In this document: piece by piece, positions 2,507 through 46,569 of the stretch
Position numbering within the stretch: the stretch's first letter is position 1
How the letters are laid out: each line of letters begins with the position of its first letter
Assembly: GCA_038087875.1 (NCBI GenBank)
Contig: JAXLNO010005073.1
Coordinates: 310,001 to 374,000, forward strand
Length of the DNA: 64,000 nt
Direction: 5' to 3'
Source of the DNA: Malacoraja senta
Lineage: Eukaryota
Translations under genes and position numbers: made by a program
Notes under the pieces: generated by a model
The model's database searches: none
What the model was told of the DNA's origin: nothing
The model's input: only the letters and a program-made list of their open reading frames with translations

Positions 2507-4858
2507 CTATCTATCCACGTGGCGGTGTGCCAGCAGGCTGGAGGAGCGGGCAAAGATCTTGCTGCAGAGCAGGCAGGTGAAGGGGCGCTGGCCGGTGTGG
2601 ACTCGTCGGTGGTCAAGGCGGGTGAAACCCTTGCCACACTCAGCACACACATAAGGTCTCTCTCCGGTGTGTAACCGCTGGTGCTCCCGCAGCCCCCGTG
2701 CTCTCTTGTCGCAGTGGAGCAGCTGCTCGCCGGCGTGGGTCCGCCGGTGCTGCCGCAACCCCCGCGAGCTGTCAAACTCCTCACCGCAGTACGGGCAGTC
2801 GTAGGGCTGGCCACTGGTGTGCACGCACTGGTGAGACAGGGCGTGGGAGGCCATGGTAAAGCGCTCTCCACACACCGGGCTGGGGACGGGACGGTCGCCG
2901 GTGTGCACCCGCTGGTGGCACAGCAGTCTGCTGGAGCTGGCGAAGCCCTTGCCGCATTGGGCGCAGGTGTATGGGTGCTCGCCGGTGTGGGTGCGCTGGT
3001 GGGACCGCAGGCTGCTGGAGCGGGTGAAACCCTTGCCGCACTGGACGCAGGTGTAGGGGCGCTCGCCGGTGTGGGTGCGCTGGTGCCTCAGCAGGGCGCC
3101 GGAGAGGGCGAAACCCTTGCCGCACTGGGCGCAGGTGAAGGGGCGCTCGCCGGTGTGGGTGCGCTGGTGGGACCGCAGGTGGCTGGAGCAGATGAAGCCC
3201 TTGTCGCAGTAGCTGCAAGTGTAGGGACGCTCGCCGGTGTGGGTGCGCTGGTGCCTCAGCAGGGTCCTGGAGAAGGCGAAACCCTTGCCGCACTGGGCGC
3301 AGGTGAAGGGGCGCTCGCCAGTGTGGGTGCGCTGGTGGGACAGCAGGTGGCTGGAGCAGATGAAGCCCTTGTCGCAGTAGCTGCAGGTGTAGGGACGCTC
3401 GCCGGTGTGGGTGCGCTGGTGGGACAGCAGGGTGCCGGAGAGGGCGAAACCCTTGCCGCAGTAGCTGCAGGTGTAGGGACGCTCGCCGGTGTGGGTGCGC
3501 TGGTGGGACCGCAGGCTGCTGGAGCGGGTGAAACCCTTGCCGCACTGGACGCAGGTGTAGGGGCGCTCGCCGGTGTGGGTGCGCTGGTGCCTCAGCAGGG
3601 CGCCGGAGAGGGCGAAACCCTTGCCGCACTGGGCGCAGGTGAAGGGGCGCTCGCCGGTGTGGGTGCGCTGGTGGGACCGCAGGTGGCTGGAGCAGATGAA
3701 GCCCTTGTCGCAGTAGCTGCAAGTGTAGGGACGCTCGCCGGTGTGGGTGCGCTGGTGCCTCAGCAGGGTCCTGGAGAAGGCGAAACCCTTGCCGCACTGG
3801 GCGCAGGTGAAGGGGCGCTCGCCAGTGTGGGTGCGCTGGTGGGACAGCAGGTGGCTGGAGCAGATGAAGCCCTTGTCGCAGTAGCTGCAGGTGTAGGGAC
3901 GCTCGCCGGTGTGGGTGCGCTGGTGGGACAGCAGGGTGCCGGAGAGGGCGAAACCCTTGCCGCAGTAGCTGCAGGTGTAGGGACGCTCGCCGGTGTGGGT
4001 GCGCTGGTGGGACCGCAGGCTGCTGGAGCTGGTGAAACCCTTGCCGCACTGGACGCAGGTGTAGGGGCGCTCGCCGGTGTGGGTGCGCTGGTGCCTCAGC
4101 AGGGCGCCGGAGAGGGCGAAACCCTTGCCGCACTGGGCGCAGGTGAAGGGGCGCTCACCGGTGTGGGTGCGCTGGTGTAACAGCAGGTGACTGGTCTGGG
4201 TGAAGCCTTTGCCACACTGGACGCAGGTGTAGGGGCGCTCGCCGGTGTGGGTGCGCTGGTGCCTCAGCAGTCTGCCGGAGAGGGTGAAACCCTTGCCACA
4301 CTGGGCGCAGGTGTAGGGGCGCTCGCCAGTGTGGGTGCTCTGGTGGGACAGCAGGTAATTAGACTGGGTGAAGCCCTTGCCGCAGTAGCTGCAGGTGTAG
4401 GAGCGCTCGCCGGTGTGGGTGAGCTGGTGGGACAGCAGTTTGCCGGAGAGGGCGAAACCCTTGCCGCACTGGACGCAGGTGTAGGGCCGCTCCCCGGTGT
4501 GCACACGCCTGTGCACCTTCAGGTCCAACGACGACTTGAAGCCTTTGCCGCAGTTGGAGCAGGTGAAGGGCCGCTCACTGCTGTGCACCCGCCGGTGGTT
4601 CCTCAGCCCCGACAACTGGGCAAAGTTCTTGCCGCAGGTGCCGCAGCAATAGGGCTTCTCGCCAGTGTGAACCCGCTGGTGCATCTTCAGCTGTTTCGCC
4701 ATCTTGAAGCTCTTGTCGCACTCCGAGCCGTCGAAGGGGCGTTCTCCCATGTGCACCCGCCGGTGGATGTCCAGCCGGCTCAGGCACCGCCAGGCCTTGC
4801 CACACACGTCACACTCATAACGCTTCTCCTTGTTGTGCCCCGTCATGTGGTCCCCCAT
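2507..4858 (-). CDS. C2H2 zinc-finger array, about 28 fingers (some degenerate), main coding exon of a ZNF gene
   Basis: 783-aa ORF of repeated CxxC...HxxxH fingers with TGERP(Y/F) linkers; no KRAB/BTB/SET domain visible in this exon. Confidence 0.95.
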   Translation of the reverse strand: MGDHMTGHNKEKRYECDVCGKAWRCLSRLDIHRRVHMGERPFDGSECDKSFKMAKQLKMHQRVHTGEKPYCCGTCGKNFAQLSGLRNHRRVHSSERPFTCSNCGKGFKSSLDLKVHRRVHTGERPYTCVQCGKGFALSGKLLSHQLTHTGERSYTCSYCGKGFTQSNYLLSHQSTHTGERPYTCAQCGKGFTLSGRLLRHQRTHTGERPYTCVQCGKGFTQTSHLLLHQRTHTGERPFTCAQCGKGFALSGALLRHQRTHTGERPYTCVQCGKGFTSSSSLRSHQRTHTGERPYTCSYCGKGFALSGTLLSHQRTHTGERPYTCSYCDKGFICSSHLLSHQRTHTGERPFTCAQCGKGFAFSRTLLRHQRTHTGERPYTCSYCDKGFICSSHLRSHQRTHTGERPFTCAQCGKGFALSGALLRHQRTHTGERPYTCVQCGKGFTRSSSLRSHQRTHTGERPYTCSYCGKGFALSGTLLSHQRTHTGERPYTCSYCDKGFICSSHLLSHQRTHTGERPFTCAQCGKGFAFSRTLLRHQRTHTGERPYTCSYCDKGFICSSHLRSHQRTHTGERPFTCAQCGKGFALSGALLRHQRTHTGERPYTCVQCGKGFTRSSSLRSHQRTHTGEHPYTCAQCGKGFASSSRLLCHQRVHTGDRPVPSPVCGERFTMASHALSHQCVHTSGQPYDCPYCGEEFDSSRGLRQHRRTHAGEQLLHCDKRARGLREHQRLHTGERPYVCAECGKGFTRLDHRRVHTGQRPFTCLLCSKIFARSSSLLAHRHVDR

Positions 4859-7429: not shown

Positions 7430-8460
7430 ACTCCACAGCCCAGTTTATTCCGCTCCCGTGTGTGTTTAGAACATTATTTACCCCAGTTTTACCCCAGACC
7501 GGGTTTAATTTGCTCCCCTGTGTGTGTTTATAACATTATTTACCTCAGTTTTACCCCAGACCGGGTTTATTCAAGATTCAAGAGAGTTTATTGTCACGTG
7601 TCCCAGATAGGACAATGAAATTCTTGCTTTGCTTCAGCACAAAAGAATATAGACGCCATGAATACAGAACAGAGCAGTGTGTCCATATACCATTGTATAA
7701 ATATATACACACATGTATAAATAAAACAGATAAAGTGCAAATAAACTGATAATGGGCTATTAATATTTAGAGTTTTGGTTGAGTTGAGTTCAATATCCTG
7801 ATGGCTGTGGGGCTATGTGTGTATTTTGTTACCCTGTGTGTTTATAACATTATTTACCCGAGTTTTACCCCAGACCGGGTTTATTCCGCTCCCCTGTGTG
7901 TTTCTAATATTATTTACTGTATTATAACATTATTTACTGTCACTGTATGGCATGTTGTTACTTGTGGGCGGAGCACCAAGGCAAATTCCTTGTATGTGAG
8001 TACTTGGCCAATAAACTTACTTACTTTACCTCAGTTTTACCCCAGACTGGGTTTATTTTGTTCCCCTGTGGGTTTATGACATTATTTACCCCAGACCGGA
8101 TTTATTTTGCTCCCCTGTGTGTTTATAACATTATTTACCCCAGTTTTACCACAGACCGCGTTAATTCTGCTCCCCTGTGGGTTTATAACATTATTTACTG
8201 TATTATACTGTATTATAACATTATTTACTGTCACTGTATGTCATGTTGTTACTTGTGGGCGGAGCACCAAGGCAAATTCCTTGTATGTTAGTACTTGGCC
8301 AATAAACGTATTTACTTTACCTCAGTTTTACCACAGACTGGGTTTACTTTGTTCCCCTGTGTGTTTTATAACATTATTAACCCCAGATTTACCGGGTTTA
8401 TTCCACTCCCCTGTGTGTTTATAACATTATTTACCCCAGATTTACCAGGTTTATTCCCCC
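7430..8460. repeat. About 50-60 bp minisatellite with interspersed repeat-tail modules
   Basis: Repeated ccccagaccgggtttattccgctcccctgtgtgtttataacattatttac; inverted copies at 48915-49885 and 55466-56145. Confidence 0.9.
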
Positions 8461-8838
8461 AGACGTGCAGTTTATGTGGTGATTTATTGATTATTTACAG
8501 AGAGGGGGGGGGTTGGGAGCCAGAGAGAGGGAGATGTTTATTTATAAGGTGTTTTATCTCAGGACGCTGCTCCAGACGGTGAGTTTATATAATTGAGCCC
8601 AGTTTGACCAGTTTGATTCCCCCAGACGTGGTTTATGTGGAGATTGCCCTCAGCTCTCTCTCTCTCTCCCCACACACATGTCCACACACGTGACTGTACC
8701 GGCCTGTACTGTACTGTACTGTACTGTACAGTACTGTATGTGGTCATTGACATCACTCACCGACTCACTTCTCCCCCACGTGACCCGATCCCGCACAATC
8801 CGCTGCAGCCGCTGATCATCAGTTAGTTATTTATTTAC

Positions 8839-8886
8839 CTCAGGTCCGTCACCGACTGACGCTTCTCCGCCAGCCGCCATTTTCAT
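8839..8886 (-). CDS. Coding exon 1 of the ZNF gene, (MK)MAAGGEASVGDGPE
   Basis: AAAATGGCGGC start context, donor GAG|GTAAAT at 8838, phase 0 matching the acceptor at 4987. Confidence 0.7.
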
Positions 8887-9060
8887 GCGGTCGACGGGGA
8901 GACTCGGCCCCGGTGGGGGGGGGGAGGGGCGGGACCGGCGGGCGGGCGGCCATCTTGGTGAGGGCAGCTGAGTTCGGCAGCCGGTGGCCATCTTGGTGAG
9001 GGCAGGTGAGGTCGGCAGCCGGAGGCCATCTTGGTGAGGTCGGCGGTTGGCGGTTGGAGC
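8872..9060 (-). promoter_or_regulatory. CpG-rich promoter/5' UTR with tandem YY1-type motifs
   Basis: Three copies of an approx. 42-bp unit each containing GCCATCTTG (CAAGATGGC on minus), plus AAAATGGCGGC at the start codon. Confidence 0.65.
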
Positions 9061-9207
9061 TTTGGGCGGGAACAAGATGAAGATGAAACCGGCGCCGAGA
9101 CCCCGGACCCTGGTGACAGAAAGATGGAGAAAGATCAAATAGAACAAGTTGTCCAACAACTTTAGGCTGTGCACGCCACACCAAAGAAGAAGAAGAGAGA
9201 GAGAGGC

Positions 9208-9880
9208 TGTAAAGGTGGTTTCGGGTGGGTGAGGGTGGTTTTGGGTGGGTGTGGGTGGTTTCGGGTGGGTGTGGTTTCGGGCGGGTGTGGGTGGTTTCGG
9301 GTGGGTGAGGGTGGTTTTGGGTGGGTGTGGTTTCGGGCGGGTGTGGGTGGTTTCGGGGGGGTGTGGGTGGTTTCGGCTGAGGGTGGTTTCGGGCGGGCGA
9401 GGGTGGTTTCAGGTGAGGGTGGTTTCAGGTGCTTTTGGGTGGGTGAGGGTGGTTTCGGGTGCGTGAGGGTGGTTTCAGGTGGGTGAGGGTGGTTTCGGGT
9501 GGGTGAGGGTGGTTTTCGGTGAGGGTGGTTTCGCTTGGGTGTGGGTGGGTGAGGGTGGTTTCAGGTGAGGGTGGTTTCAGGTGCTTTTGGGTGGGTGAGG
9601 GTGGTTTCGGGTGCGTGAGGGTGGTTTTGGGTGAGGGTGGTTTCGGGTGGGTGAGGGTGGTTTCGGATGGGTGTGGGTGGTTTCGGGTGAGGGTGGTTTT
9701 GGGTGGGTGAGGGTGGTTTTGGGAGGGTGTGGTTGGTTTAGGGTGGGTGAGGGTGGTTTCGGGTGGGTGAGGGTGGTTTCGGGTGGGTGTGCGTGGTTTC
9801 GGGTGGGTGTGGGTGGTTTCGGGTGGGTGTGGGTGGTTTCGGGTGGGTGAGGGTGGTTTCGGGTGGGTGTGGGTGGTTTC
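9208..9880 (+). repeat. G-rich approx. 20-bp minisatellite (GGGTGGGTGAGGGTGGTTTC)n
   Basis: Direct tandem repeats; short continuation at 10456-10567; inverted copy at 47685-48171. Confidence 0.95.
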
Positions 9881-10455
9881 ATAGAAACATAGACAATAGG
9901 TGCAGGAGTATGCCATTCGGCCCTTCGAGCCTGCACCGCCATTCAATATCATGGCTGATCATCGAACTCAGTATCCTGTACCTGCCTTCTCTCCATACCC
10001 CCTGATCCCTTTAGCCACAAGAGCCACATCTAACTCCCTCTTAAATATAGCCAATGAACTGGCCTCAACTACCTTCTGTGGCAGAGAATTCCACAGATTC
10101 ACCACTCTGTGTGAAAAAAAATGTTTTTCTCATCTCGGTCCTAAAAGATTTCCCCCTTATCCTTAAACTGTGTGACCCCTTGTCCTGGACTTCCCCAAAA
10201 TCGGGAACAATCTTCCTGCATCTAGCCTGTCCAACCCCTTAAGAATTTTGTAAGTTTCTATAAGATCCCTCCTCAATCTTCTAAATTCTAACGAGTACAA
10301 GCCAAGTCTATCCAGTCTTCATATGAAAGTCCTGACATCCCAGGAATCAGTGAACCATCTTTGTACTCCCTCTATGGGAAGAATGTCCTTCCGCAGATTT
10401 GGAGACCAAAACTGTACGCAATACTCCAGGTGTGGTCTCACCAAGACCCTGTACG
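9881..10455 (-). mobile_element. CR1 LINE 3' fragment inserted in the G-rich minisatellite
   Basis: Reverse-strand [13 protein letters not shown] and CR1 tail; same tail junction (ctatgtttctat|gaaacc) occurs near 47680. Confidence 0.9.
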
Positions 10456-11577
10456 GGTGGGTGAGGGTGGTTTTGGGCGGGTGAGGGTGGTTGTGAGTGG
10501 GTGAGGGTGGTTTTGGGTTGGTGTGGGTGGATGAGGGTGGTTTCGGGTGGGTGTGGGTGGGTGAGGGTAAAAAAATCACAAACCGTACGTAAGTAAGTAA
10601 ATTTTATTTATATAGCACGTTTAAATCAACTTGCGTTGAAACCAAAGTGCTTTACATAAAAGAAATAATTAAGTTTCCGTACATCCATAGAAAAAATTTT
10701 AAATAAGAAAAAATGACACAACACATTATAGAATTCAACATGAACGTCCCCCCACAACAGAATCAAAATTTTCCACTGTCCACGGCATCAAAATGTTCAG
10801 TCCTCTTCCTCTGTGATCACCCGAATTACGTTTTACTCAGATGCAAGCGAAGGAATGGCATAATTGTTAGCTGTTAATTGGACATAATCAACTTCAGCAA
10901 ATTGACAATATCCTATTGAAGGATAGTGGGTGTTTAAGCTGTCAGGACATTTTATTATTTGCCAAAATATACATCTCAATAGCATAATGATAGAAAACTT
11001 TTCTACACATCACTCGTAAGTCTGGAGATTTCTTTAATGATAAATTTAGCTTCAGAGGCGTTTTCTTTTTGCATGTACAAACCCACTTCAGAACCATGGG
11101 CGATTTTAAAATTATACAGCCAGATTTATCACTTCTGAAACTTTTTAGATACCAAAGGAATCAAGAAAAAACACAAATAATGCCTTACTGTTGATGAAAT
11201 GCAGTGAGCAAAGGCGATAATTCCCAATATTTTCAATCTCGATATCTGCACGGCCAATGTTAACAACTCTGATTTTTCATCGATGGGAAAAAGCCTCTGG
11301 TCCAGCTCAGCGGAGGGGGACTCTGAGCGAGGTGGTCAAAAATCACGGCCGTAAGTGGCGGCGTTCTTTCAGAAATCACGAAACAGAAAGTCAGAAAGTG
11401 GTCAAGATCTTAGTTTTAGTAATATAGAAGATGAATGTGATGATTTTGATAACTCGGGAAGTACATTCGTGAAAGTATGTAGAAATTATAAAGTAAAAAA
11501 TTCAATTCCAAAAATTGCAACGTTGCACTTGTCAAAGTCCAAGCCTTCACTTTCCACTCTCTTCACAGTATTCATGT

Positions 11578-11619
11578 TTATGTTTTTACTGTTTCAGCAT
11601 AGATGACAGACTCATCTTC
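11578..11619 (-). CDS. Candidate terminal cytoplasmic exon EDESVIYAETVKT*
   Basis: Acceptor ttgtttcttcaaag, phase 0, tyrosine motif VIYAET, stop TAA at 11578-11580. Confidence 0.6.
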   Translation of the reverse strand, partial: EDESVIYAETVKT

Positions 11620-11769
11620 CTTTGAAGAAACAAGGTTCTGAAAGAGAAGGAAATACCAATTGTATTTAAGACCGTTGCTGTTGTCGCTGTTTAGATCAGT
11701 AAACAGATTACAGCTTTAATTCATACTTGTACGATCTGGGATTTCATCAACAAGAATCAATATACTTAC

Positions 11770-11813
11770 AGTGCCTGATGCTTGATTGGAGGACAGTGTA
11801 TTATCGCTGCTGC
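11770..11813 (-). CDS. Candidate cytoplasmic exon (G)SSDNTLSSNQASGT
   Basis: 44 nt; acceptor tttattacag, donor gtaagt; phase 1 to 0. Confidence 0.7.
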
Positions 11814-11985
11814 CTGTAATAAATGCAAACATCACAATTAAAAATGACACTGGTGGATTATGTTGACAAAGGAAACGACAAATGGAATATAAAAGTCTAA
11901 AGCTTACTACATTTTGCTCTTCCTGACAGTAGATCAACAAGACATAGAATTCCAGAAAACCCATCTGTCATCTGTATGCTCATAC

Positions 11986-12003
11986 CTCTGCATTTACAGT
12001 GAG
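11986..12003 (-). CDS. Candidate 18-nt cytoplasmic micro-exon xHCKCR(G) with CxC motif
   Basis: Acceptor ccattcctgcag, donor gtatga; phase 1 to 1; sequence CTCACTGTAAATGCAGAG. Confidence 0.62.
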
Positions 12004-12914
12004 CTGCAGGAATGGTCAGCATGAACAAGACACCCTTATATTGCTATGGAAGGAATCGACTATGAATAAGTGAATTAACACAGCAATTGACAGAGCAGCA
12101 GCCCGGGCAGGAAATAAGCTATGAAGCTGCATCTGTGGCTGGGATAAGATATCATCAGAGAAGGGTCTCAAGATCCATCAAGGCAGGGAAAAGTGCCTGG
12201 GAGAGCTTGGTGAGGGGCCTCGCATTGACCATTACCTTCTAAGTGGTAGGCCAAATCAGTGGAGTGAAGCCCAGTGGAAGGTTAACCACCACAGTCCACA
12301 GGGTATCAGCACCCCAGGTGAAGCTCAACCAAGTACTGTCCCACCAACGGACACGAGTCCAGAGCCCAACCAGCCACAGTCAGCGGTAGAGAGGAAGATG
12401 GAAGGATAAAAGCAGAATGGAGCAGTCACTGGCTGTGGCTGAAGAGAAAAGATGCTGTCTGGGCTGCCACGTGACCATCTAGAGGCTAACCATAAGACAC
12501 ACACCCAGGGCTGATCACCCTGTGGTGGGCCTGCCTTGACTGAAGGTGTCTTGTGATAAAAGGCCGAAACACCCAGTGATGTTGAGGTACACAACTGAAG
12601 ATGTGTCTGATTGGTAGCAAAATCACCTCGTGGTCTCCCCCAAGAATATTGGGTCAGTTGTGGTGAAGAAACTTAGGGATTGTAACATCCAGTCCTACTA
12701 AACAATATCAAAAATTTGTAATTCAAGGAAGTTTGCGCTGATCACTTCTAGCTCAGTCAGGAGTTGTGTAGAAGAATGTTCTTCAGATGGACATAAATGG
12801 TGTCTTGGTTTCACTTCTCATCACCAACGACAATGCACAACAGTGTTGTAACAGCAGCCTGGATGTCACTGGTTGGATCTCTGGAGTGGCTATTGTACCC
12901 TTTCAGAGTAGGCT

Positions 12915-13049
12915 AGGGGACCAGAACCCACTTAGAGTAGGTTAGGGGACCAGAACACACTCCCTGTAGTTTAGGGGAACAGAACACACTCCCTGTAGTT
13001 TAGGGGACCAGAACACACTCCCTGTAGTTTAGGGGACCAGAACACACTC
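12915..13049. repeat. 29-bp tandem repeat, about 4.5 copies
   Basis: taggggaccagaacacactccctgtagtt units. Confidence 0.9.
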
Positions 13050-14026
13050 GGAGAAGGCTGGGGAGGTTGAACCCACCCAGAGAAGGTTGGACTCCTAACT
13101 GAGCCTCAGCTGACTCTCCCACTTCATGTCGACGGATAGAGTGAGGGACCTTATCCCAGGAATGCCTGGTGCTGTTGTAAGGTGGCCAAAGACAGCAGGG
13201 TTTCAGACTACTCAGTGCCAATAATCCTCACTGTGATAAAAGTTTAAAACATTTAAATAAAGTCATTTTACCACCAGATGCTTTTGGCTGGAAGGAGATG
13301 GATCCATAATGAATACCTTCTTCTGTATCTGTGGAAATAAGTTGGAAACAAAGAATTTATTTGTATTTGAAAAGGGATGATTTAAGTCAATGCAGGGTCA
13401 CGATACAAAACACTGATCATCGCTTTCCCTCCATAGATGCTGCTCGACCCATAGAGTACCTCCAGCAGTTTGAAAAAACCCTCCATGAAAAGTCACATCT
13501 CCTAACCTCCTTGTTTTGACTTCTTCCTGGGATGGTGGAAATTACAAAGAGAATTTGAGTTAATTTGGCTTGTGGAGTTTAGAAGAATGACAATGGTTCT
13601 CATGGAAACATAGAAAATTCCAACAGGTAGACCAGTCTGGATGGAGGAAGATGTTCCCTGTTGGGGGAGACCATGACCAGGGGTAAAGGTTTAAGCCAAG
13701 AGACAATAAGGATGAAGATGAGGAGAACAAAGAATCTGTTACATTCTCTACCACACATTTGTCTGGAGCCAAATCATTCAGTACATTTTAGTAGTTGTTG
13801 AATTTATTGACAGATACACAACAATGGCGAGGTACAGGTACAATGAAAATGTTGCCTGCAGCAGCATCAGAGGCATTTTGACTAAGGCAACACAACACAT
13901 AAATGAAGCATAAATTACAAAGACCACAGGTTAGTGGAAAAAAAGACTGCAAAACACAAACTAGAGACCAGTCATATGTGGACTATGATCAAGGAATATG
14001 GGTAGATATGATCAGCTGAGGTTCAG

Positions 14027-15145
14027 TTTAGTTTATTGTCATGTGTGCCGAGGTTCAGTGAAAAGCTTTTGTTGCATCAGCAGAAAGACAATATATGAAT
14101 ACAATCGATCCCTTTACAGTGGAACACAGTGGAATACAATTGATCCATACTGTGGAACAAGGTAAGGAATTGATATTTTTCTCATTAAAATATGAGCAAT
14201 GTCTGATTTATTGAAAGGTTCCTTCAGATGTTTCAAGAAAGATTTCACTGTTGTTCATCAGATTCATCAGAAATGTGGTCTAAATTCTGGCAAAAACAAT
14301 ACTGTCCACCATTTGACCACGGATGGCTCAAATCCCCCGACCGAGGAAGATCACAAGTGAAGGACTTGAACTTTATTTCACCTTCCATCACAGTGAGGAA
14401 TGTGTAGGAGTCACAGTGGTGGATGTTCATGTTAAAATGTGTTTTTGTGTCTGTTGCTTTTTAATTGTATGACTGACCTGGCCAGTGAAATTCCTCGTAT
14501 GTTGCAAAACATACTTGGCGAATAAAATATGATTCTGATTCTGTCTAAGGTAGAAACAAAGAACTGCAGATGCTGGTTAATACACAAAGGGACACAAAGT
14601 GCTGGAGTACCTCTGCAGGTCAGGCAGCAACTCTGGAGGACATGTATAGGTGAAGTTTCGGGTCGTGATCCTTCTTCAGACTCAAAAGAAGGGTCTCGAT
14701 CCGAAACATCACCTATCCATCATCTATTAATGATGCCCAAACCATTCTGAAATTTTGTTATTTTCACTTTAGAATAAAATCTGAACTAGTGGCAAAGTGA
14801 ATTGGAGGCATTTAATGCTAGATGATATTTTGTGAAAGGGATGGTGACTTTTGAAAGGGCAAGTGTTGTCCATTCTTTAGAGAGCCACTAACCAAGCTGA
14901 TAACCAGGATCAACAATAAATTAGGAGAGTGAATATGTTGTTCATGGTGATGTCTCAACATTCATGGGTTGACCATGATAGTCAGTGAAAATTAGTCAAT
15001 TGACCAATGCAGAGTAAGACCTGCAGTTGGATGAGGAAGATTGGGACTGAGGGGTGAATTGACACAAGAGAGACTGTTGGTTTGATCAATTAGTTTGTGT
15101 GCTTGAGGTTCCCTTCCTCACATTCTTGTTACAAAACTGTGAAAT
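14027..15145 (-). repeat. Inverted copy of the region downstream of the Ig-receptor TM exon
   Basis: Reverse complement matches 45286-46393 (e.g. gatccctttacagtgg / ccactgtaaagggatc). Confidence 0.92.
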
Positions 15146-15263
15146 TTAAAAACATTGACGTCATTTACTAAACACCTCATTTACTAAACACGTCATTTAC
15201 TAAACACTCGAAATTTAGTTGAGATAGAAAATAGGAAGCGAAACAGCCCAGAGCTTAGAATAG

Positions 15264-15407
15264 ACAAATCATTGTGGTTAAACTGCAAGATAGCTCTTCA
15301 TGCAGCCTTGACCATTGCTCTGAATGATTCAGGACCTGATGCAAAATTCAGAGCAATGGTCAAGGCTGCAGGAAGAGCTGTCTTGCAATTTAACCACAAT
15401 GATTTGT
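15264..15407. mobile_element. Palindromic MITE-like element
   Basis: Approx. 60-bp imperfect inverted arms (acaaatcattgtggttaa...ttaaccacaatgatttgt); related partial copy near 24770-24860. Confidence 0.65.
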
Positions 15408-17145
15408 TTTTTTAACCACAATGATTTGCTTCCTGTTTTTTATCTGACTAAATTTCACAATTTGTAAATAAACATCAGAAGTGTGAAGGACAAAGACAAT
15501 ATCAAACCATCCCAAAACCTATTGAAACATGCAAAAGAGAATCAGGGGTGGATTATTTGTCACTTTGAGCCTGTTCAATCATTCCAAACAATCTCATATT
15601 CCAATTCTCTCCCGATAAATTTTGATGCATTTTATGTCAAATAAATCTATCCCCTACTTAACAGGATTCAGTGACCTGCCATCTACCATTTTCTGTGGGG
15701 TGGATTTCAATGGCTCACCATATTCACAATGAAGAAATGTCTCAGCCCTAAATGTTTCACCCCTTATCTTGCGTCCAAAACCCCTTGTTCCAGATCCTAC
15801 AGTCACTGGAAATATCTTTATGTATCAAGTCTGTCTAGCTCTGCTTTGAATGTTGTTTAATTTAGAGAGGTCATGTTTAAGTCTTCCAAACTCCAGTGAC
15901 TACTGGCTCAGTCAGCTCCTCCTCTCCTTACACATTAGTCCTGCCATTCCAGGAATCAGTCTGGTCAGCCTTGGCTGCATTACATATGTGGCTGAAAAAA
16001 CCTTTCTCCGGTAAGGAGAGCACAAAGACATGTTTGGAGAGACATAGGCCAGGCACAGCCAGTTGTGATGGGGTCAGTTGGACATCTTGGTCAGCATGTG
16101 TGCGTTGGGTCGATGTGTCTATTTCCATGCTCTACAGCTCTATGACTCTCTGCTGCATCTGTGTATATTTGGCAAGTAACTCAACTGACTGACATCACCT
16201 GGAAACCTCTTTGCATCCTCTTTGCTTCTCCTACTTACTCTCATTTTCATGTCATCAAACTTAGAAACATTAAATTTGTTTCCTTGTCAATACCATTGAT
16301 GAACATTGAAAATAACGGACTCAGGAACCATCATTCATCACCAACTGCCACCCTAACGAAGTCTTCTCTCTGTTTCCTGTCTGCCAAATAATTTTCAATT
16401 CATGCCTGTTTAATATTGTCTAATCCACATATTAAAAAATTCAAAGACCTTCTAAAAATTTGACACATACTCTTGTTCTCCCTGAAACAAACAAAAACAA
16501 TCTGCTGGAGGGACTCAGTGGGTCAGGCAGCATCTGTCGAGGGAAATGTGCAGATGACCCTGTATCGTGACCCTTCTTCAGTTGTCAATGGTCATCTGTT
16601 CATTTACTTCCACAGATGATTCCTGATCCACAAATTCCCTCCAGCAGTTTGCTCTTTGCTCGTGTTTCCAGAATCTGCAAACTCTTGGGTCTCCACATCT
16701 TCTCCCTTATCTATTCTACATGGTACGTCACCATCATCTCCAATGATTTCGCTTACATAAATTCAAAAATACATTGTCTTATCGCATAAATTATTTTAAA
16801 ATATCCAAACACTGTTTTGGAACCTGGAAGCACCAAACCAGGTTGGAGATTGAAATATTTTTTAATGAATAAAGAGCAGTCATTTGTAGAGAGAAACACC
16901 ACTATTTTATTTTTTTAATCAGTGGAAAGTAGCAAAAATAATGTTAAAAATTATGCTTTTTGGTCAAGACAACAACAATGCAATAGTTAGATACTATCCT
17001 TATAATAAATACATCCTCAGCACACATGCCCCATGTTCTGTTCTCACGTATTAAAAAAATCTCATAGTAATAAAAAATTACATAAATAGAATTATACGGA
17101 ATTACTTTTAAATGTAAAGGGTAAATAGAGACGTTGTTTCTGAAG

Positions 17146-24720: not shown

Positions 24721-25307
24721 TTCCCTTAGTTGAGAACAAATCAGGAAGTAAAACAGCCCAGAGATCAAAATAGACGAATCATTGTGGTTGAATTGCATAA
24801 AAGCTCTTAATGCAACCTTAACCATTGCTCTGAATTTTGCTTCAGGTCCTGAATGTGATATGAGTTTGTATGTTGGTTGCACCAAGCTTCAGTGCGTCCC
24901 TCAACACGTTTTCCTGCAGTCTGGAGTGGGTCAGGTGGCAACATTCCCTGATGGAACACACTTTGACATATCGTTGCTTCATTCCTCAGCACAGTAACAG
25001 TATGTGGGAGATGGGGCAATGTTCCTGTCCTTATAATCCAGCCTTTGACCCACAGTGAGCAGCACCAGAACGGAAGTATTGCAATTGAAGTTTTATCTTT
25101 AGAAACAAAATAGACACTTCCTCAATCTTACATTCAATGGCCTTAGCATTGAAGGCAAGCATATCATACGCCTTCTTCACTACCCTAACTACTTGTGCTG
25201 CCACTTTCCGTGAGCTATCAACGTGGACTCCAAATGCACTGAAGATATGTGTCTCAAACTGGCTCAGTCTAAAATTCTATGTTTTTTCCCCACAGGGAAT
25301 CCACAAA

Positions 25308-25395
25308 ATGAGGCCCAGGTTTTTCTGCAGCAGTTTGCCAGCTGGTTTGATGTTCGGTGTCTTTGTTTTCCGGCTTCGACCTGTTTCCACACAGA
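25308..25395 (+). CDS. Leader (signal peptide) exon MRPRFFCSSLPAGLMFGVFVFRLRPVSTQ
   Basis: Acceptor ttttttccccacag ends at 25295, ATG 25308, donor A|gtaagt, phase 1. Confidence 0.75.
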
Positions 25396-26089
25396 GTAAG
25401 TGCTTTCTCTTCACCGGTCACAACCACGTTGCTTTACTTTATCATTGTCCGTGTAAACCCACACCCCATTGTCAATCTCACTTTCCTCTCCACGTCCCAC
25501 AAATCCACCCTATCCTTGCTGGAGCTCCATTTCTGAGCCTCTCCCATTAGCTCCCTCCCTCCCCTTCCCCTGCACCAACATGGTCCTTTTCAAAGTCAGA
25601 AATGGCCCCCGGTGAGTAGTGTAAAATGGTTGTCCACACCATCCTCCCCAGCATCTTCCCACCACAGTCCAGGTGGGTGGAACTGCCCTTGACTTATCGA
25701 TCCAGTCGCAGCCCGAGAACTACCCGCAATGTCTTCACTTCACGCTCCAGCACAGTTCCCTCGGGCACCCTCCGACAATCTACCATGGACCCCTCCTATT
25801 TCCTATCCTCAAGCTGCCCTTCGGTGATATCAGCTGAAGTTTCACCGTTGCTTCCACAAGTTGACTGTGGACACCAGCTCGACCTCGCTAGCACCTCCCT
25901 CGAACCCTCCATAGTCTCCACATTCCCAGACAACACGTGGGACATCCAGGACTGGATCAGCAGAATCCCCCCCCAACTGAACACTTTGAATCCCAAAGCC
26001 GTTGTCTTCAGTCCCACCACAACCCCTTTCTCCAGCCAGCAATTCCATTCCATTCAAATCCCAGAATATTTAGGGTCAGACTGGTGATT

Positions 26090-29000
26090 CTGTGGCAGCA
26101 AACCAGACTCCAGGATGGTGTGTTGCCTCCCTGGTGCCAGGGTCCAGGATGTCTCCCAGCAGGTGTGGGACATTCTCAAGGACGAAGGTGAACAGCCAGA
26201 AGGCGGTGGGCACTTTGGCACAAATGGGATGGGTAGGAAAAGGGATGAGGTCTGATAGTTTCCCTACCACTGACATGAGTCTCACTACATTAACAACTCT
26301 CCAACCCTTCCACGAACTCACCTGTGGCGAGAGAACACACACAGATCTTTATCAAGGCTCGCTGGGCTCGTCATCTCCAGATTCCTCCCGGTGCCATGTG
26401 TTAGTGAAGGTAGGAATAGGAAGAAAGGGCAGATGAATGTATGGCTCAGGACTTGGTGCAGGGGGCAGAGATTCAGATTCAGATCTTTCTGCCATTGGCA
26501 TCTCTTCTGGGGCAGGCGTCACCTCTACAAGATGGATAGTTTGTATCTGAAATGGAGGGGACCAATAGGTTTGCAGGGAGGTGCACTAGTGTTACCAAGA
26601 GGGCTAAACTGGAGAGGCAGGGGGGGTGATGGGAAGGTGGAGATGAAGATAAGTAAGTCTTAAAAGAAGGACAGACAGAGGGAGGTGAAGTTATATAGTG
26701 AAACTAATGGATGGAGGTATGTTCATTCCAATGCTAGGAGTATTGTGGGCAAAGTAGATGAACTTAGAGCCCAGATCGCTGTTGGGGACTATGATGTTGT
26801 GGTCATTGTGGAAATATGGTTGTGACAGGGACATGACAAGCAGCTCAATGTTCCGTGTTTCTATGGAAAAAAGATGGGGGAATTGCTCTATTAATCAGGG
26901 AAACTATCTTGTTGGCATTCAGAGTGGGGACTCTGGATGGTTTGTCCATTGAGGTGATATGGGTAGAGCCATGTGAAAATAAGAAAGGTGCAAGCAATTC
27001 AACGGAATTGTATGAGAGGTCCCCCAAGAGTGAGCAGGAAATAGAGGAACAGATGTGGACACAGATTACTGAAAGATTACACAAATGGATGTCTTGGGGG
27101 GTGACTAATGGTATATTCAATAGGATGTTTTGTAACAGTTGTGAATAGTGCAACGTGAGAAAGGAATCCAAAATGGACCTTGTGTTGGGAAATGAGTCTG
27201 GCCAAGTGACTGATGTTTTAGTGAAAGAGTATTTTGGAGACAGTGAATACAACTCCATAAGTTTTAAGATTGGTTTGAATAGGGATAAGTCTGGACTGTG
27301 CGACAAGACATTAACTTGAGTAAGGCAAATTACACCATTATTAGGCAGGAGCTTGTTAAGGTACACTCAGAGCAGTTGTTATTAAGTTACTCCAAGTCTG
27401 AGATTGAGAATTGTCTGAAGGTCAGTTTATTCAAACTCAATACCGGCAAGTTCCAGTAAGGAGGAGAGATAAGACTGGCAAAGTAAGGGAACCTGAGATG
27501 ACCAAATACATTTGTAAATTTGGTCAAAAATAGAAAGGAAACACATGCAAGGTTCAAGAATATGATAGCAGAGAGGGCCATTGAGGAATATAAAGCAAGG
27601 AGGAAAGAACTCAAGCGGGCGATTAGAAGGGAGAAAATAGGCCACAAAATAGCTGTGGCGATTTGGAGTAAAGAAAGTTCCAAGGCTTCTTATACTTACA
27701 TTAAAATCAAGACGGTAGACAAGGAGAAGGTAAACAAGGATAAATGAAGGAAACTGAAACTGGAGTTAGGGGATGTAGGTGTGGTGTCAGATAACTCCAG
27801 GGATGAGAGGAGCAAGGGCAAAAGAAAAAAAATGAAATAAAATAAAATATGTCAGTAAAAAGGTGGGGTGGATTGTTTGGGGATTTGTTGCCTGAAAGTC
27901 AGGAATTCAATGTTCATACCATTAAGTTGTCAGATACCCAAGAGAAATATGAAGTGAAATTTCTTCAGTTTGCATGTGGCCTCACTGGCAATGGAGGAGG
28001 CCAAGGACAGAAAGATCAGTTTGGGAATAGGAGTTTAAATGGTTTATTTGTTTAGAGATAGAATTCAGCGAATTAAAGAACTGTGAATCACATGACAACA
28101 GTAGGAAACAATTGGAAAGGATTCTTTGGGATAGAATTGACTCCCATTTGGAACAAAATAGATGAGGGGATTAAAGACAGTAGGCATGACTTTTACGTGG
28201 CATTGTCTACAGTGATTTTAGTAAGGCACTTGACAAAGTTCCCCATGATAGACTGATGCTGAAGATTAATAAGCATGGGATTAACATTGAATTGTTTGTC
28301 AGGATTCAGAATGGGCAGACTAGAAAACAGAGGAAAAGGCAATATTCAGGCAGGAAATCTGTGACCAGTGGAGTTCTCTATGGATCTCTGCCAGGACCAC
28401 TGTCGGTCATGATTTATACAATTAATTTAAATGTAGATGGGTTGGTTAGTACATTTGCAGATGGGAACAAAATTGCTGCACTATGAACAACGCTGTCAAA
28501 TTATCAAAGTATGTTGTAAAGTAATGAATGGGATATAGACCAGCTACAGAAATGGGTGTACAAATGACAGATCAAGTTTAATCCAAGCATCTGTGAGGTG
28601 TTGCACTTTGGGAGGTTGAATATAAGGGGAAGATATACAATTAACAGCAAGGCCCTTAACAGCATTGATGTACAGAGGGACCTTGGGATCCAAGTCCAGA
28701 ACTCTGTGAAAATGGTAATACAGGTAGATAGAGTGACAAAGAAAGCAGATGGCGTGCCTTTGGTTGGATCATTGGGTATAAGAGTCAGGAAGTCAGGATG
28801 TGATGCAGCTTTGTAGGACTCTGGTTAGGCCGGATTTCAAGCATTACATGCAGTTCTGGATGCCCCAAAAAGATGCAGAGGTTTTGGAGACAGGGCTGAG
28901 AAGGTTTACAAGAATGATGCCTGTGTTACTGGATATTAGCTACAGGGAGAGGTTGAATACTTGGATTGTTTTCTCTGGAATGTTTGACATTGAAGTGAGG

Positions 29001-29360
29001 CTTGATAGAATTCTACCAAATTATGAGCGGCAAGGTCAATGTAGACAGTCAGAATCTTTTCCCCAGGATGGAAATATCAAATACAAGAGGGCATGGGGGC
29101 TTTTAGGTGAGAGGGGAAAAGTGTGAAGGAGATGTGAAGGACAAGTATTTTACAGTGGTGAGTGACTGGAACATGCTGCTGGTGGTGATGGAGGTAGATG
29201 TGTGAATGGGATTTAAGAGACTTTTGGATAGGCACATGGACATGCAGGGAATGGAGAGATATGGATTATGTGTAGGCAGATAAGACTTGGTCGTGGCATT
29301 ATGCTCGACATAGACCTTGTGGGCCGAGGGGCTTGTTCCTGTTCTGAACTGTTCTATGTT
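26090..29360 (+). mobile_element. Old, degenerate near-full-length CR1 in intron of the Ig gene
   Basis: ORF1 esterase-like CCLPGARVQDVS near 26110; endonuclease start SNARSIVGKVDEL near 26725; decayed RT and CR1 tail. Confidence 0.8.
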
Positions 29361-29765
29361 GTAAATCACTGTGGAATGAGGAGCAGGCAGGGAGGCAGGA
29401 GCATGTTTATTCTGTTCCAGGTCTGTCCGACAAGGGCCGGGGATGCGGTGTGTACAGGATCGGCCTGATCTCCACCCACATCAGGAAACCCCGTCACAGA
29501 GAACACCGGCTGGAGACCCGACACAAACGCCCTTCCACCTCCGTCTTTCTCCCACTCACTCTTCTCATGTCATGAAGTATCGCTGGATCAGGCCAGGTTA
29601 TTCCAGCCAGCCATCTATTCACAAACTGTGTCCGTCTCACTGGAGGTTCTGTGGGAGATTACAACATTCTGGAAATAAATGAAATTCAAAATTAATAATT
29701 ACAGACATGGAGTGGAGGAAATGTGCTTAAAATGTTAATTCCTACATTTTTCCTATTTCCAACAG

Positions 29766-30107
29766 AAATCAGAAATCAGATTTATTTCTTGGATAATGGA
29801 GGCGACATTGTGTTAAAAGGACCGGACAATCCTGGGAGTAAAACTGTTGTCTGGGAATGGGAACCACACTCAGGGCCTGGAAAACAGACAGTGGTAACTC
29901 TCCGCGTCGCGGACAAGGGCACGTGGAGCAGACAGTGGGGCAATGGCTGGGGAAACATAGACAAGAACCAGGAGGTGGATGTGGATCTCCGTACTGGTAA
30001 TCTGGCAATAAAAACACCCAGATTTAAATGGTCAGGATTGTTCACTTTGACCGAAACACAGCCGAGGAACCAGATCCTGAAACAATATGAAATATATGGG
30101 ATCAAAG
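29766..30107 (+). CDS. Ig domain D1, V-like without canonical cysteines
   Basis: 342 nt, phase 1-1; IVLKGP...WEW...GNLAIK...SGLFTL. Confidence 0.85.
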
Positions 30108-31663: not shown

Positions 31664-31930
31664 TTGAGGCAAGTCCACAGAGGCCTCTGCTGGGCAGTGA
31701 CGTCACACTCAGCTGCACCATCTCCAGACTCTCAGATACAGTCAGTCTTCACTGGAGACCCATGGACTCATCCCAGCAGAACAGGAACAACACTGATCAG
31801 ATCCGCCTGGATAACACGGTCTATCTGATGGTTCAACACGTTACAGTGGAGGATGGGAAGTATGTGTGTGATGTGCAGGAAAACGGAAACATTGTTCACA
31901 CAAGTAATGGAGATTTTACTGTGGACAACG
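31664..31930 (+). CDS. Ig domain D2, C2-type
   Basis: 267 nt; DVTLSCTIS...LHW...DGKYVC. Confidence 0.9.
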
Positions 31931-32981: not shown

Positions 32982-33318
32982 ATTTATATTATGGGAGATA
33001 CACACTTTACCGCTCCAGCACAGATCACAGTGAACTTCACCTGGTTTGTTCTGTGAGTGGTAGGTATTCCCGTGCTCAGTGGACCTGGACACCTCATCGC
33101 CTTCAACAGCAGAAAGTAATAGCATCTGCAGACCGTTCTCAACCCAACAATGTCAATGGGACCGACTTCAGGAATCGACTGGTGACCTCAGGGAAACCCT
33201 TCGATGGCAAGGATTTCAGTGTGAGGATTGTCCCCGTTGTGTTTAAAGATGCCGGAATTTACACCTTTTTTTCTGGAATCAAATCGATTTCCCACCATTT
33301 ATCTCATCACAGTGAAAG
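32982..33318 (+). pseudogene. Ig domain D3, V-type, +1 frameshift
   Basis: 337 nt (3n+1); T7 run at 33266-33272 replaces the F-strand Cys (paralog D7 has DAGVYTC). Confidence 0.85.
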
Positions 33319-33396
33319 GTAGGAGACAGAATGTTGCCACTGAGTTTACTGATGAACTTATTGTTTAAAATGTAAACAACCTGCTTGTTTCCACAG

Positions 33397-35416: not shown

Positions 35417-35450
35417 GTCTGAAGAAGGGTCTCAACCTGAAACGTCACCT
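35417..35450 (+). ncRNA. Minimal type I hammerhead-like motif (Penelope-derived repeat)
   Basis: CTGAAGA-A-GGGT-CTCA-ACCT-GAAAC-GTC; intact core and GUC triplet, short stem I. Confidence 0.55.
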
Positions 35451-37070: not shown

Positions 37071-37199
37071 AGATGAGTGGGGGGAGGGGAGGGGGAACTC
37101 TACAATCAGGAGGGGAGGATTGAGTCTACAACCAATTCCACTGTCTTAAGAGCACAGAACTTCAGGTTGTTGCGATGTCAACAGGACACCAGCTTTATG

Positions 37200-44309: not shown

Positions 44310-44417
44310 AGAATCACCATTTTGGATACATCATTGTTGGAATTATCGGGAGTCTGGCTCTTCTCATCGTCATTATACTGGCAGTGGTGTGGTGTCAAAG
44401 AAAGCGCAAGCCTACAG
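44310..44417 (+). CDS. Transmembrane exon NHHFGYIIVGIIGSLALLIVIILAVVWCQRKRKPT
   Basis: 108 nt, phase 1-1; hydrophobic stretch followed by a Cys and a basic stop-transfer. Confidence 0.9.
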
Positions 44418-44675: not shown

Positions 44676-46569
44676 TCTGACCACGTGGTGATTGTGTCCC
44701 CATCCCCTGTGTAAACCATTATCAAATAAACATGCCAGAAGTTGAAGTATAGCTAGTGTAGTCATGTAGAAAATATGGTCTCCAATTTGCCCTCAATATG
44801 TTCCTATTTACTGAGGGATGAATATTAGCCAGGAAACCAGGAGACCAAGGTATCTCCACTGCACTTTGGTGGTTCAAACTTAAAGTGAAAACGTTGCCTT
44901 GTGTACCATCCTAATATGGTCATAATTTAGGGAACACTGTGTTTCCATGGACTCTGATTTTATACACATGGTCTTATCCCACCATTAAATGTCTCTGACA
45001 TACATCTGAAGCCATGTTCCTGGTCATTCTGGTGGATCTCATTATTAATGGGGTACAGTTTAAACACTGGATTGCTGCTTCTTTAAAATCAAGCCGGATT
45101 AAAGTCTTAATCAGAAAATAATACTTATTTTCCAGAAATTAACGTGACCCCAGTACCTGAGATGAGCCGTGTTACTGAATATATGTCTGTGAGTAGGAAG
45201 ACAAAGCAAGAAGGTAAATAGATGACTCAGTCAATGAATCTCTAGTTGTAGAGGTGTTGTATTTGATGAAGCAACCTATTTCACATTTCACAGTTTTGTA
45301 ACAAGAATGTGAGGAAGGGAACCTCAAGCACACAAACTAATTGATCAATTCAACAGTCTCTCTTGTGTCAATTCACCCCTCAGCCCCAATCTTCCTCATC
45401 CAACTGCAGGTCTTACTCTGCATTGGTCAATTGACTAATTTTCACTGACTATCATGGTCAACCCATGAATGTTGAGACATCACCATGAACAACATATTCA
45501 CACTCCTAATTTATTGTTGATCCTGTTTAACAGCTTGGTTAGTGGCTCTCTAAAGAATGGACACTTGCCCTTTCAAAAGTCACCATCCCTTTCACAAAAT
45601 ATCCTCTAGCATTAAATGCCTCCAATTCACTTTGCCACTAGTTCAGATTTTATTCCAAAGTGAAAATAACAACAACATTTCAGAATGGTTTGAGCATCAT
45701 TAATAGATGGCGGATAGGTGATGTTTCGGATCGAGACCCTTCTTTTGAGTCTGAAGAAGGGTCACGACCCGAAACTTCACCTATACATGTCCTCCAGAGA
45801 TGCTGCCTGACCTGCAGAGGTAGTCCAGCACTTTGTGTCCCTTTGTGTATTAACCAGCATCTGCAGTTCTTTGTTTCTACCTTAGACAGAATCAGAATCA
45901 TATTTTATTCGCCAAGTATGTTTTGCAACATACGAGGAATTTCACTGGCCAGGTCAGTCATACAATTAAAAAGCAACAGACACAAAAACACATTTTAACA
46001 TGAACATCCACCACAGTGACTCCTACACATTCCTCACTGTGATGGAAGGCGAAATAAAGTTCAAGTCCTTCACTTGTGTTCTTCCTCGGTTGGGGGACTC
46101 GAGCCATCAAATGGTGGACAGTATTGTTTTTGCCAGAATTTAGACCACATTTCTGATGAATCTGATGAACAACAGAGAAATCTTTCTTGAAAAATCTGAG
46201 GGAACCTTTCAATAAATCAGACATTGCCCATGTTTTAATGAGAAAAATATCAATTCCTTACCTTGTTCCACAGTGTGGATCAATTGTATTCCACTGTGTT
46301 CCACTGTAAAGGGATCGATTGTATTCATATATTGTCTTTCTGCTGATGCAACAAAAGCTTTTCCCTGAACCTCGGCACACATGACAATAAACTGAGAGTG
46401 TGTGTGTGTCTGAGAGTGTATGTGTGTGTGTGTGTGTGTATAGGGGGGTTGCACGCAAGGTCACCGGGTCAAAGGGCATGACGCATGGAGCTGCTCTGGA
46501 GGACATCGCAGCTTCCAGTATATGTTGTTAATACACGAAACGCGTACTTTCCTACCTGTTAAAAACCTG

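What the first reader, a model, noticed from the sequence alone, without database searches (positions are those of the whole stretch)
11578..12003. Hidden three-exon cytoplasmic tail with a CD4-type CxC clasp and a tyrosine motif
Seen: three small minus-strand exons of 18, 44 and 42 nt with AG/GT signals and phases 1-1, 1-0 and 0-stop. They join to xHCKCR-GSSDNTLSSNQASGT-EDESVIYAETVKT*. The entry phase matches the phase-1 end of the Ig-receptor TM exon (...CQRKRKPT-G). Established: a membrane-proximal CxC is the zinc-clasp motif by which CD4 binds the LCK N-terminus. Inference: this is the signalling tail of a CD4-like family member, combining a CxC motif with a tyrosine motif (VIYAET, not a canonical ITIM). 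None of these exons appears in the ORF track as a joined product.
Basis: partly seen in the sequence, partly recalled or inferred. Interest (0 to 1): 0.9.

Follow-up and report, generated by a model that had tools for sequence, protein, structure and literature searches.

The report
Skate Ig receptor inhibitory tail exons
Two of the three proposed mini-exons are real and form the end of an inhibitory (ITIM-type) signalling tail of a skate immune receptor family, but the CD4-like "CxC clasp" mini-exon is not used in any transcript or gene model I could find.

Summary
All three AG/GT-bounded segments exist as described. Exon 2 (11813-11770, minus strand) is confirmed. Exon 3 is real, but its acceptor is at 11637, not 11619, which adds NLVSSK.

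The 18-nt HCKCR "exon" (12003-11986) is not supported. Spliced contigs from a related skate join exon 2 directly to a 57-nt exon at 13328-13272 that encodes a canonical ITIM (IHYGSI). RefSeq proteins of four batoids (Amblyraja radiata, Leucoraja erinacea, Rhinoraja longicauda, Narcine bancroftii) have the same join with no CxC insert. That intron holds 112 equally valid frame-preserving pseudo-exons.

The real tail reads ITSM exon (TEYMSV, 45136-45213 plus strand), ITIM exon, exon 2, exon 3. It is 93.7% identical, end to end, to the C-terminus of A. radiata XP_032868266.1.

It does belong to the CQRKRKPT-type receptor family. The L. erinacea homologue has that TM plus this tail, and the family's best PDB profile hits are LAG-3 and then CD4.

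In this assembly the last three tail exons lie inverted relative to the gene body, between 1.15-kb inverted repeats. They are collinear in the two other skates examined.

Verdict: an ordinary ITIM/ITSM inhibitory tail of a family listed in databases only as uncharacterized, with no LCK clasp.

The parts
13272..13328 (-). 57-nt cytoplasmic exon, phase 1-1, encoding (D)TEEGIHYGSISFQPKASG with a canonical ITIM, IHYGSI. This is the true upstream partner of exon 2.
   Evidence: The acceptor ag (13330-13329) and donor gt (13271-13270) were read. The X1 loose end at 11814 matches 13302-13272 at 30/31. The exon is 95% identical to A. radiata P0050 residues 248-267 and 90% to L. erinacea P0048 residues 485-504.
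11770..11813 (-).
   Evidence: Sequence. Spliced joint 11770/11637 in X1, and an exon-2-like sequence joined at 11637 in X2. L. erinacea has an in-frame 15-nt deletion here, while intron indels are 1 and 12 nt.
11578..11637 (-). Terminal coding exon, NLVSSKEDESVIYAETVKT plus TAA. The acceptor is at 11637, not 11619. The distal tyrosine motif VIYAET is degenerate; relatives have the canonical ITIM VIYAQI.
   Evidence: (joint at 11637). L. erinacea carries an in-frame 3-nt insertion.
11986..12003 (-). 18-nt AG/GT-bounded open segment (xHCKCR), the proposed CxC exon. It is most likely an unused pseudo-exon.
   Evidence: It is skipped in the spliced contigs and in the RefSeq models of four batoids. 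It is one of 112 such segments in the intron. It is identical in L. erinacea and A. radiata, but so are 33-35-nt purely intronic runs nearby. One organism-A contig has the donor changed GT>GA and TGC>TAC.
45136..45213 (+). 78-nt cytoplasmic exon of the plus-strand eight-Ig gene, phase 1-1, encoding (E)INVTPVPEMSRVTEYMSVSRKTKQE with a canonical ITSM, TEYMSV. In relatives it is spliced directly to the ITIM exon.
   Evidence: It is 92% identical to P0050 residues 222-247 and P0048 residues 459-484.
44310..44417 (+). Probable TM exon of the plus-strand gene (..NHHFGYIIVGIIGSLALLIVIILAVVWCQRKRKPT|G). The helix is uncharged and the exon ends in phase 1.
14030..15178 (-). Inverted-repeat arm. It corresponds to the intron between the ITSM and ITIM exons in other skates and is 95.5% identical to 45251-46393 on the plus strand.
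   Evidence: Self-BLAST. Collinear with L. erinacea L001 38035-38997 and A. radiata L002 19677-20496.
45251..46393 (+). Second copy of the arm, directly after the ITSM exon. It is followed by only 178 bp, including a (GT)n run, in place of the 3.6 kb that carries the ITIM exon, exon 2 and exon 3 in the minus-strand copy.
13094..13171 (-). Open AG-preceded segment, APGIPGIRSLTLSVDMKWESQLRLS*. It is homologous to the terminal exon used in A. radiata XP_032872606.1 (TM spliced to a short tail) and is a possible alternative short-tail terminal exon.

Best explanation
The region holds the last three exons of the cytoplasmic tail of a batoid Ig-superfamily receptor with V-C2-V-C2 modules, here doubled to eight domains. 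The exons, all on the minus strand, are 13328-13272 (ITIM IHYGSI), 11813-11770, and 11637-11578 (VIYAET plus stop).

Joined to the ITSM exon (TEYMSV) of the neighbouring gene, they give EINVTPVPEMSRVTEYMSVSRKTKQE-DTEEGIHYGSISFQPKASG-GSSDNTLSSNQASGT-NLVSSKEDESVIYAETVKT*.

Inferred mechanism: after ligand engagement, Src-family kinases phosphorylate the ITSM and ITIM tyrosines. These recruit SH2 phosphatases (SHP-1/SHP-2) and damp activation, as in CEACAM1, CD33-type Siglecs and PECAM-1.

The HCKCR segment is an unused intronic pseudo-exon, so there is no CD4-type zinc clasp.

In this assembly the three terminal exons are inverted relative to the gene body, flanked by 1.15-kb inverted repeats. 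Whether that is a real inversion or an orientation error is open. If real, the plus-strand gene would end after the ITSM exon (read-through gives ..KTKQEGK*) and the tail exons would be an orphan.

Shown: exon boundaries, splicing in a relative, homology, the inverted arrangement. Inferred: phosphatase recruitment and inhibitory function.
For: - Spliced contigs show the joint 11770/11637 (GT..AG) and an upstream continuation matching 13302-13272.
- The reconstructed 79-aa tail aligns without gaps to residues 222-300 of 300 of A. radiata XP_032868266.1 at 93.7% identity. It is 80% identical to L. erinacea LOC129701493, 75% to R. longicauda and 59% to N. bancroftii.
- The L. erinacea protein has the CQRKRKPT TM followed by this tail.
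- The L. erinacea and A. radiata loci are collinear with window 15151->11430 on the minus strand, right after their ITSM exon.
- Indels are in-frame in the exons (15 nt, 3 nt) but 1 and 12 nt in the introns.
- No Cx(C/H) occurs in any of 14 family tails.
- There are 112 chance pseudo-exons in the intron.
Against: - The RNA evidence comes from assembled contigs of a relative (92-95% identical) in runs whose type is uncertain; two are flagged 'probably DNA'.
- The one true polyA RNA run laid (X16, 6% sampled, tissue unknown) had no reads on these exons.
- In the window the tail is on the opposite strand from the only nearby gene body. No Ig or TM exon lies upstream on the minus strand between 13.3 and 25.3 kb. 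Expression of this particular copy is therefore unproven.
- The distal motif VIYAET is not a canonical ITIM.
- The HCKCR segment has good splice signals and is identical in three skate genomes, so rare inclusion cannot be excluded.
Confidence: 0.85

Rival explanations
1. The 18-nt HCKCR segment is a genuine, rarely or tissue-specifically included cassette micro-exon (phase 1-1). It would insert a CxC motif between the ITIM exon and exon 2, giving an isoform that can clasp LCK.
For: The acceptor (ttcctgcag) and donor (GAG|gtatga) are strong, and the segment preserves the frame. It is 100% identical with intact AG/GT in L. erinacea and A. radiata.
Against: It is skipped in the spliced contigs. 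It is absent from RefSeq models in four species, including isoforms, and from all 14 family tails. No protein fragment containing it was found. Invariant runs of the same length occur in pure intron sequence. The intron holds 112 equivalent pseudo-exons. One organism-A contig has the donor GT>GA and the second Cys changed to Tyr. The motif would be about 50 residues from the membrane, after the ITSM and ITIM.
Confidence: 0.04
2. In this genome the three tail exons are a dead orphan. A real inverted duplication or inversion cut them off from the receptor gene, so they are not expressed. The plus-strand gene makes a truncated, ITSM-only receptor.
For: The tail lies on the minus strand and the gene body on the plus strand. 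No upstream Ig or TM exon lies on the minus strand. The plus-strand copy of the downstream region lacks the 3.6 kb that carries the tail exons. X16 polyA reads gave no coverage.
Against: All three exons keep open frames and splice sites and are 93.7% identical to the A. radiata protein tail. Inverted repeats flanking a segment are a classic setting for an assembly orientation error or a polymorphic inversion. Both other skates examined are collinear.
Confidence: 0.35
3. The tail is spliced to the minus-strand gene whose TM exon lies at about 63.9 kb, across roughly 50 kb that contain the plus-strand gene.
For: It is on the same strand and has the same CQRKRKPT|G phase-1 TM exon.
Against: That gene's next cytoplasmic exon (61551-61450) carries an in-frame TAA where relatives have Tyr. 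No ITSM exon lies on the minus strand between 61.4 and 15 kb. A whole convergent gene lies in between.
Confidence: 0.03

Closest known systems
Amblyraja radiata XP_032868266.1 (uncharacterized LOC116966230) and Leucoraja erinacea LOC129701493
   Same: The same four terminal tail exons (ITSM, ITIM, exon 2, exon 3) at 93.7% and 80% identity. The genomic order matches the window's minus-strand segment. L. erinacea also has the CQRKRKPT TM.
   Different: In those genomes the tail is in cis with the Ig and TM exons, whereas here it is inverted. L. erinacea has an extra LGNQ..HLYGNP (YxN) exon and a canonical distal VIYAQI. The A. radiata model skips the TM exon.
ITIM/ITSM inhibitory IgSF receptors (CEACAM1-L, CD33-related Siglecs, PECAM-1); recalled from knowledge
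   Same: Type I IgSF receptor with an uncharged TM. The tail is built of small phase-1 exons, with an acidic-residue-preceded ITIM of the xxIHYxSIxF type (compare Siglec EELHYASLNF and CEACAM1 VTYSTLNF) plus a second tyrosine motif near the C-terminus. It should work the same way, by SHP-1/2 recruitment.
   Different: No detectable orthology. The ectodomain is V-C2-V-C2 of LAG-3/CD4 type rather than Siglec or CEACAM type. The only Pfam hit to the tail is sub-threshold, to SIT.
LAG-3 and CD4
   Same: V-C2-V-C2 domain order. The family profile's best solved-structure hits are LAG-3 (E 7.8e-13), with CD4 at 1e-7. Like LAG-3, the predicted signal is inhibitory.
   Different: There is no Cx(C/H) LCK-binding motif, which defines CD4 tails (PMC10768021). 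I did not look for the (F/Y)xxL(D/E) motif that the same paper gives as the conserved LAG-3 tail motif. The tails here carry canonical ITSM and ITIM motifs and are encoded by several micro-exons. The family is a batoid multigene expansion with doubled (8-Ig or longer) members.

Membership tests
CD4 (LCK-coupled co-receptor) | A Cx(C/H) motif in the cytoplasmic tail that forms the zinc clasp with LCK (PMC10768021). | tested here: not met
   The only CxC is in the 12003-11986 segment. That segment is skipped in the spliced contigs and absent from 14 homologous tails.
CD4 (LCK-coupled co-receptor) | A four-domain V-C2-V-C2 ectodomain with sequence similarity to CD4/LAG-3. | tested here: inconclusive
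   Pfam finds V-set and Ig domains alternating. The profile search puts LAG-3 first (7.8e-13) and CD4 at 1e-7, but NCAM, CD22 and CEA score in between. No tree or synteny test was done.
ITIM-bearing inhibitory IgSF receptors | At least one canonical ITIM, (I/V/L/S)xYxx(I/V/L), in the cytoplasmic tail. | tested here: met
   IHYGSI is encoded at 13328-13272 and conserved as I(H/Q)Y(G/A)(S/T)(I/V/L) in 14 relatives.
ITIM-bearing inhibitory IgSF receptors | An ITSM, TxYxx(V/I), accompanying the ITIM. | tested here: met
   TEYMSV at 45136-45213 on the plus strand. It is in cis with the ITIM only in the other skates.
ITIM-bearing inhibitory IgSF receptors | A TM helix without a charged residue, so no pairing with ITAM adaptors. 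| tested here: met
   YIIVGIIGSLALLIVIILAVVW has no K, R, D or E.
ITIM-bearing inhibitory IgSF receptors | Phosphotyrosine-dependent binding of SHP-1, SHP-2 or SHIP, and inhibition of activation. | not testable with these tools
   Needs biochemistry.
Batoid 'uncharacterized LOC' V-C2-V-C2 receptor family (A. radiata LOC116966230, L. erinacea LOC129701493) | The conserved multi-exon tail ..EY(M/A)SV..KxKQ(E/Q)-D..IHYGSISF..-..NQ(A/S)S(G/D)(T/A)-NLxxSKED..S(V/I)IYA... | tested here: met
   Gapless 79-aa alignment at 93.7% to XP_032868266.1. The genomic segments are collinear.

The most novel reading that the evidence does not exclude
The 18-nt HCKCR segment has strong splice signals and is identical in three skate genomes. 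It could be a rare, tissue-restricted cassette exon that adds a CxC motif to an ITSM/ITIM tail of a LAG-3/CD4-like receptor. One gene could then switch between an LCK-clasping isoform and a purely inhibitory one.
Probability: 0.04. Interest if true: 0.75.

Novelty: new member of a known kind. Interest (0 to 1): 0.3.

Why it matters
The finding corrects an attractive but unsupported claim of a CD4-type LCK clasp in a skate receptor. What is there instead is the end of an ITSM/ITIM inhibitory tail.

The family is a LAG-3/CD4-like multigene family in skates and rays. Databases list it only as "uncharacterized", and I found no paper describing it.

For annotation, it gives exact exon boundaries for a tail made of micro-exons that ORF-based tracks miss.

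It also flags a 30-kb segment whose orientation, flanked by inverted repeats, separates the gene body from its signalling tail. That is either an assembly error worth fixing or a natural rearrangement that turns an inhibitory receptor into a truncated one.

Tried and rejected
- RNA evidence in this species. The first read-laying run over 11000-16900 was swamped by repeats. The polyA raw-read run X16 (organism F) gave only repeat-derived reads at 11605-11729 and none on the exons.
- Paralogous tail exons elsewhere in the window. None were found. The SDVYAET hit at 61.8 kb and the TESES hits at 45.9 and 14.5 kb are chance or SINE sequence.
- Upstream Ig or TM exons on the minus strand between 13 and 26 kb. 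None were found.
- Short transcript-derived protein fragments carrying the HCKCR insert. No candidate was found.
- Conservation as a test for the HCKCR exon. It is uninformative, because introns are about 93-94% identical among the three skates and contain equally long invariant runs.
- Pfam on the tail. The only hit was a sub-threshold match to SIT.
- No structure prediction was run, because it was not needed for the question.

Full report
**Observation.**
- 12003-11986 is 18 nt and reads xHCKCR.
- 11813-11770 is 44 nt and reads GSSDNTLSSNQASGT.
- 11619-11578 reads EDESVIYAETVKT*.

A better acceptor (ctctttcag|) lies 18 nt upstream of the third segment. It starts the exon at 11637 in the same frame and adds NLVSSK.

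One is on the plus strand ending at 44417. The other is on the minus strand at about 63.9 kb.

**Transcript evidence.** Only assembled contigs of relatives, plus one raw polyA run, were available.
- In run X1 a contig joins 11770 to 11637, skipping 132 nt bounded by GT..AG.
- A second X1 contig makes the same join with an in-frame variant of the first 27 nt of the exon (NLVAEDEA).
- In X2 a 248-nt contig runs from the 3' UTR through exon 3. At 11637 it continues into a diverged exon 2 (..TLFSNLASGT).
- Two X1 contigs continue upstream of exon 2 into 62 unmatched letters. Their reported 30-letter consensus, extended by the base matched at 11814, matches window 13302-13272 at 30/31.
- That site is a 57-nt exon at 13328-13272, with ag before and gt after, in phase 1-1. 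It encodes (D)TEEGIHYGSISFQPKASG.

So exon 2 is spliced to an ITIM exon 1.46 kb upstream, and the HCKCR segment is skipped.

A collinear, unspliced organism-A contig over the HCKCR segment has the donor changed from GT to GA and TGC changed to TAC.

The polyA run X16 (6% sampled, tissue unknown) had no reads on the exons. This is uninformative.

**Homologues.** A full HMMER search with the third Ig domain of the neighbouring plus-strand gene returned only 46 proteins. Many of them end in a tail that aligns to the spliced product ITIM exon, exon 2, exon 3.

The closest ones, by name:
- Amblyraja radiata XP_032868266.1
- Leucoraja erinacea LOC129701493
- Rhinoraja longicauda LOC144591061
- Narcine bancroftii isoforms

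All are annotated as "uncharacterized".

The L. erinacea protein reads as follows:

..VVFCQRKRKPT | ALGNQSQ..HLYGNPDEIQQMA | EINETPVPEMSRVAEYMSVSRKTKQE | DAEEDIHYGSISFQPKASG | GSSDNQASDT | NLVASKEDEASVIYAQITNTKT

This shows that the tail does belong to the CQRKRKPT-type receptor. The link runs through further phase-1 exons, not through HCKCR.

In the window the ITSM exon (EINVTPVPEMSRVTEYMSVSRKTKQE) is at 45136-45213 on the plus strand. Joining it to the three minus-strand exons gives a 79-aa product. That product aligns without gaps to residues 222-300 of 300 of the A. radiata protein at 93.7% identity.

None of the 14 family tails contains Cx(C/H).

**Chance and conservation.** The intron 13271-11814 holds 112 AG..GT segments of 9-90 nt that keep phase 1-1 and have no stop. 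The HCKCR segment is therefore not more than chance gives.

The segment is identical, splice sites included, in L. erinacea and A. radiata. But the introns are about 93-94% identical overall and contain purely intronic invariant runs of 33-35 nt.

The real exons show coding behaviour. Exon 2 has a 15-nt indel and exon 3 a 3-nt indel, both in frame. The intron indels are 1 and 12 nt.

**Genomic context.** Window 15151->11430 on the minus strand is collinear with L. erinacea L001 38035->40838, immediately after its ITSM exon. It is also collinear with A. radiata L002 19677->25645. In both of those species the tail is in cis with the Ig and TM exons.

In the window the gene body runs on the plus strand from 25.3 to 45.2 kb, while the tail is on the minus strand.
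- The intron piece after the ITSM exon is present twice as inverted repeats: 45251-46393 plus and 15178-14030 minus, 95.5% identical.
- A second block is also duplicated: 46.57-49.9 kb plus and 10.4-7.5 kb minus.
- The plus-strand copy has 178 bp, including a (GT)n run, where the minus-strand copy has the 3.6 kb carrying the tail exons.
- No Ig or TM exon lies upstream on the minus strand.

Flipping the 30-kb spacer would restore the collinear gene. I could not tell a real inversion from an orientation error, because both read-laying runs were already used.

**Mechanism (inferred).** The receptor has an uncharged TM. Its tail carries a canonical ITSM (TEYMSV), a canonical ITIM (IHYGSI) and a degenerate distal motif (VIYAET; relatives have VIYAQI). 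This predicts an inhibitory receptor that recruits SHP-1/SHP-2 after tyrosine phosphorylation.

The arrangement resembles CEACAM1-L, CD33-type Siglecs and PECAM-1; that comparison is from my own knowledge.

A family profile hits LAG-3 best among solved structures (7.8e-13) and CD4 at 1e-7. The "CD4/LAG-3-like ectodomain" idea therefore has some support. However, the CD4-defining Cx(C/H) motif (PMC10768021) is not met.

**Verdict.** This is a new member of a known kind, an ITIM/ITSM inhibitory IgSF receptor. Its gene models already exist in RefSeq for related skates, uncharacterized.

Earlier notes of this scan place the eight-Ig gene at 25296-44417 (s1-140252). They also mention an ITSM/ITIM eight-Ig receptor of the same V-C2-V-C2 build elsewhere in the genome (s1-140236). 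Both are consistent with this reading.

Noticed in passing
window 61450-61551 (-): The cytoplasmic exon after the minus-strand TM exon (63.9 kb) reads GLGNQRQTAPPSKRNTESESQL*GNLEEIQQKAG. It has an in-frame TAA where relatives have the Tyr of HLYGN/QLYSN. That gene copy would be truncated 22 residues after the TM, or it is a pseudogene.
   Followed up: partly
window 42492-43639 and 44661-45795 (+): A direct duplication (96% identical) flanks the TM exon. It places a second ITSM-exon copy (about 42976-43053) upstream of the TM exon. RefSeq models in A. radiata (XP_032868266.1) and one Narcine isoform join the last Ig exon straight to the ITSM exon, giving TM-less products.
   Followed up: partly
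window 13094-13171 (-): An open segment, APGIPGIRSLTLSVDMKWESQLRLS*, sits inside the ITIM-to-exon-2 intron. It is the homologue of the terminal exon of A. radiata XP_032872606.1, where the TM is spliced to a 25-aa tail without tyrosines. The frame and stop are kept in L. erinacea and A. radiata, but at only 72-76% amino-acid identity.
   Followed up: partly
window 7497-10415 (-) vs 46571-49886 (+); also 49500-50668 vs 54683-56084: Further large duplicated blocks downstream of the receptor genes. They include 20-bp minisatellites (9214-9880 and 47713-48169) and LINE fragments. The cluster is built from repeated segmental duplications.
   Followed up: no
window 2888-4501: A GC-rich tandem array with an 84/168-bp period and about 19 copies. 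P0046 matches it on the minus strand at about 30% over 400 aa. The array probably encodes a C2H2 zinc-finger protein (28-aa repeat), judged from the repeat period alone.
   Followed up: no
window 15270-15400: A palindromic, MITE-like element (attgtggttaaa..tttaaccacaat) sits right at the upstream edge of the inverted-repeat arm. A similar element lies near 24.8-25.0 kb.
   Followed up: no
window 12040-12715: A 675-bp insertion relative to L. erinacea lies inside the ITIM-to-exon-2 intron. It coincides with a high-copy repeat (depth 1000-2400 in X1-X4).
   Followed up: no
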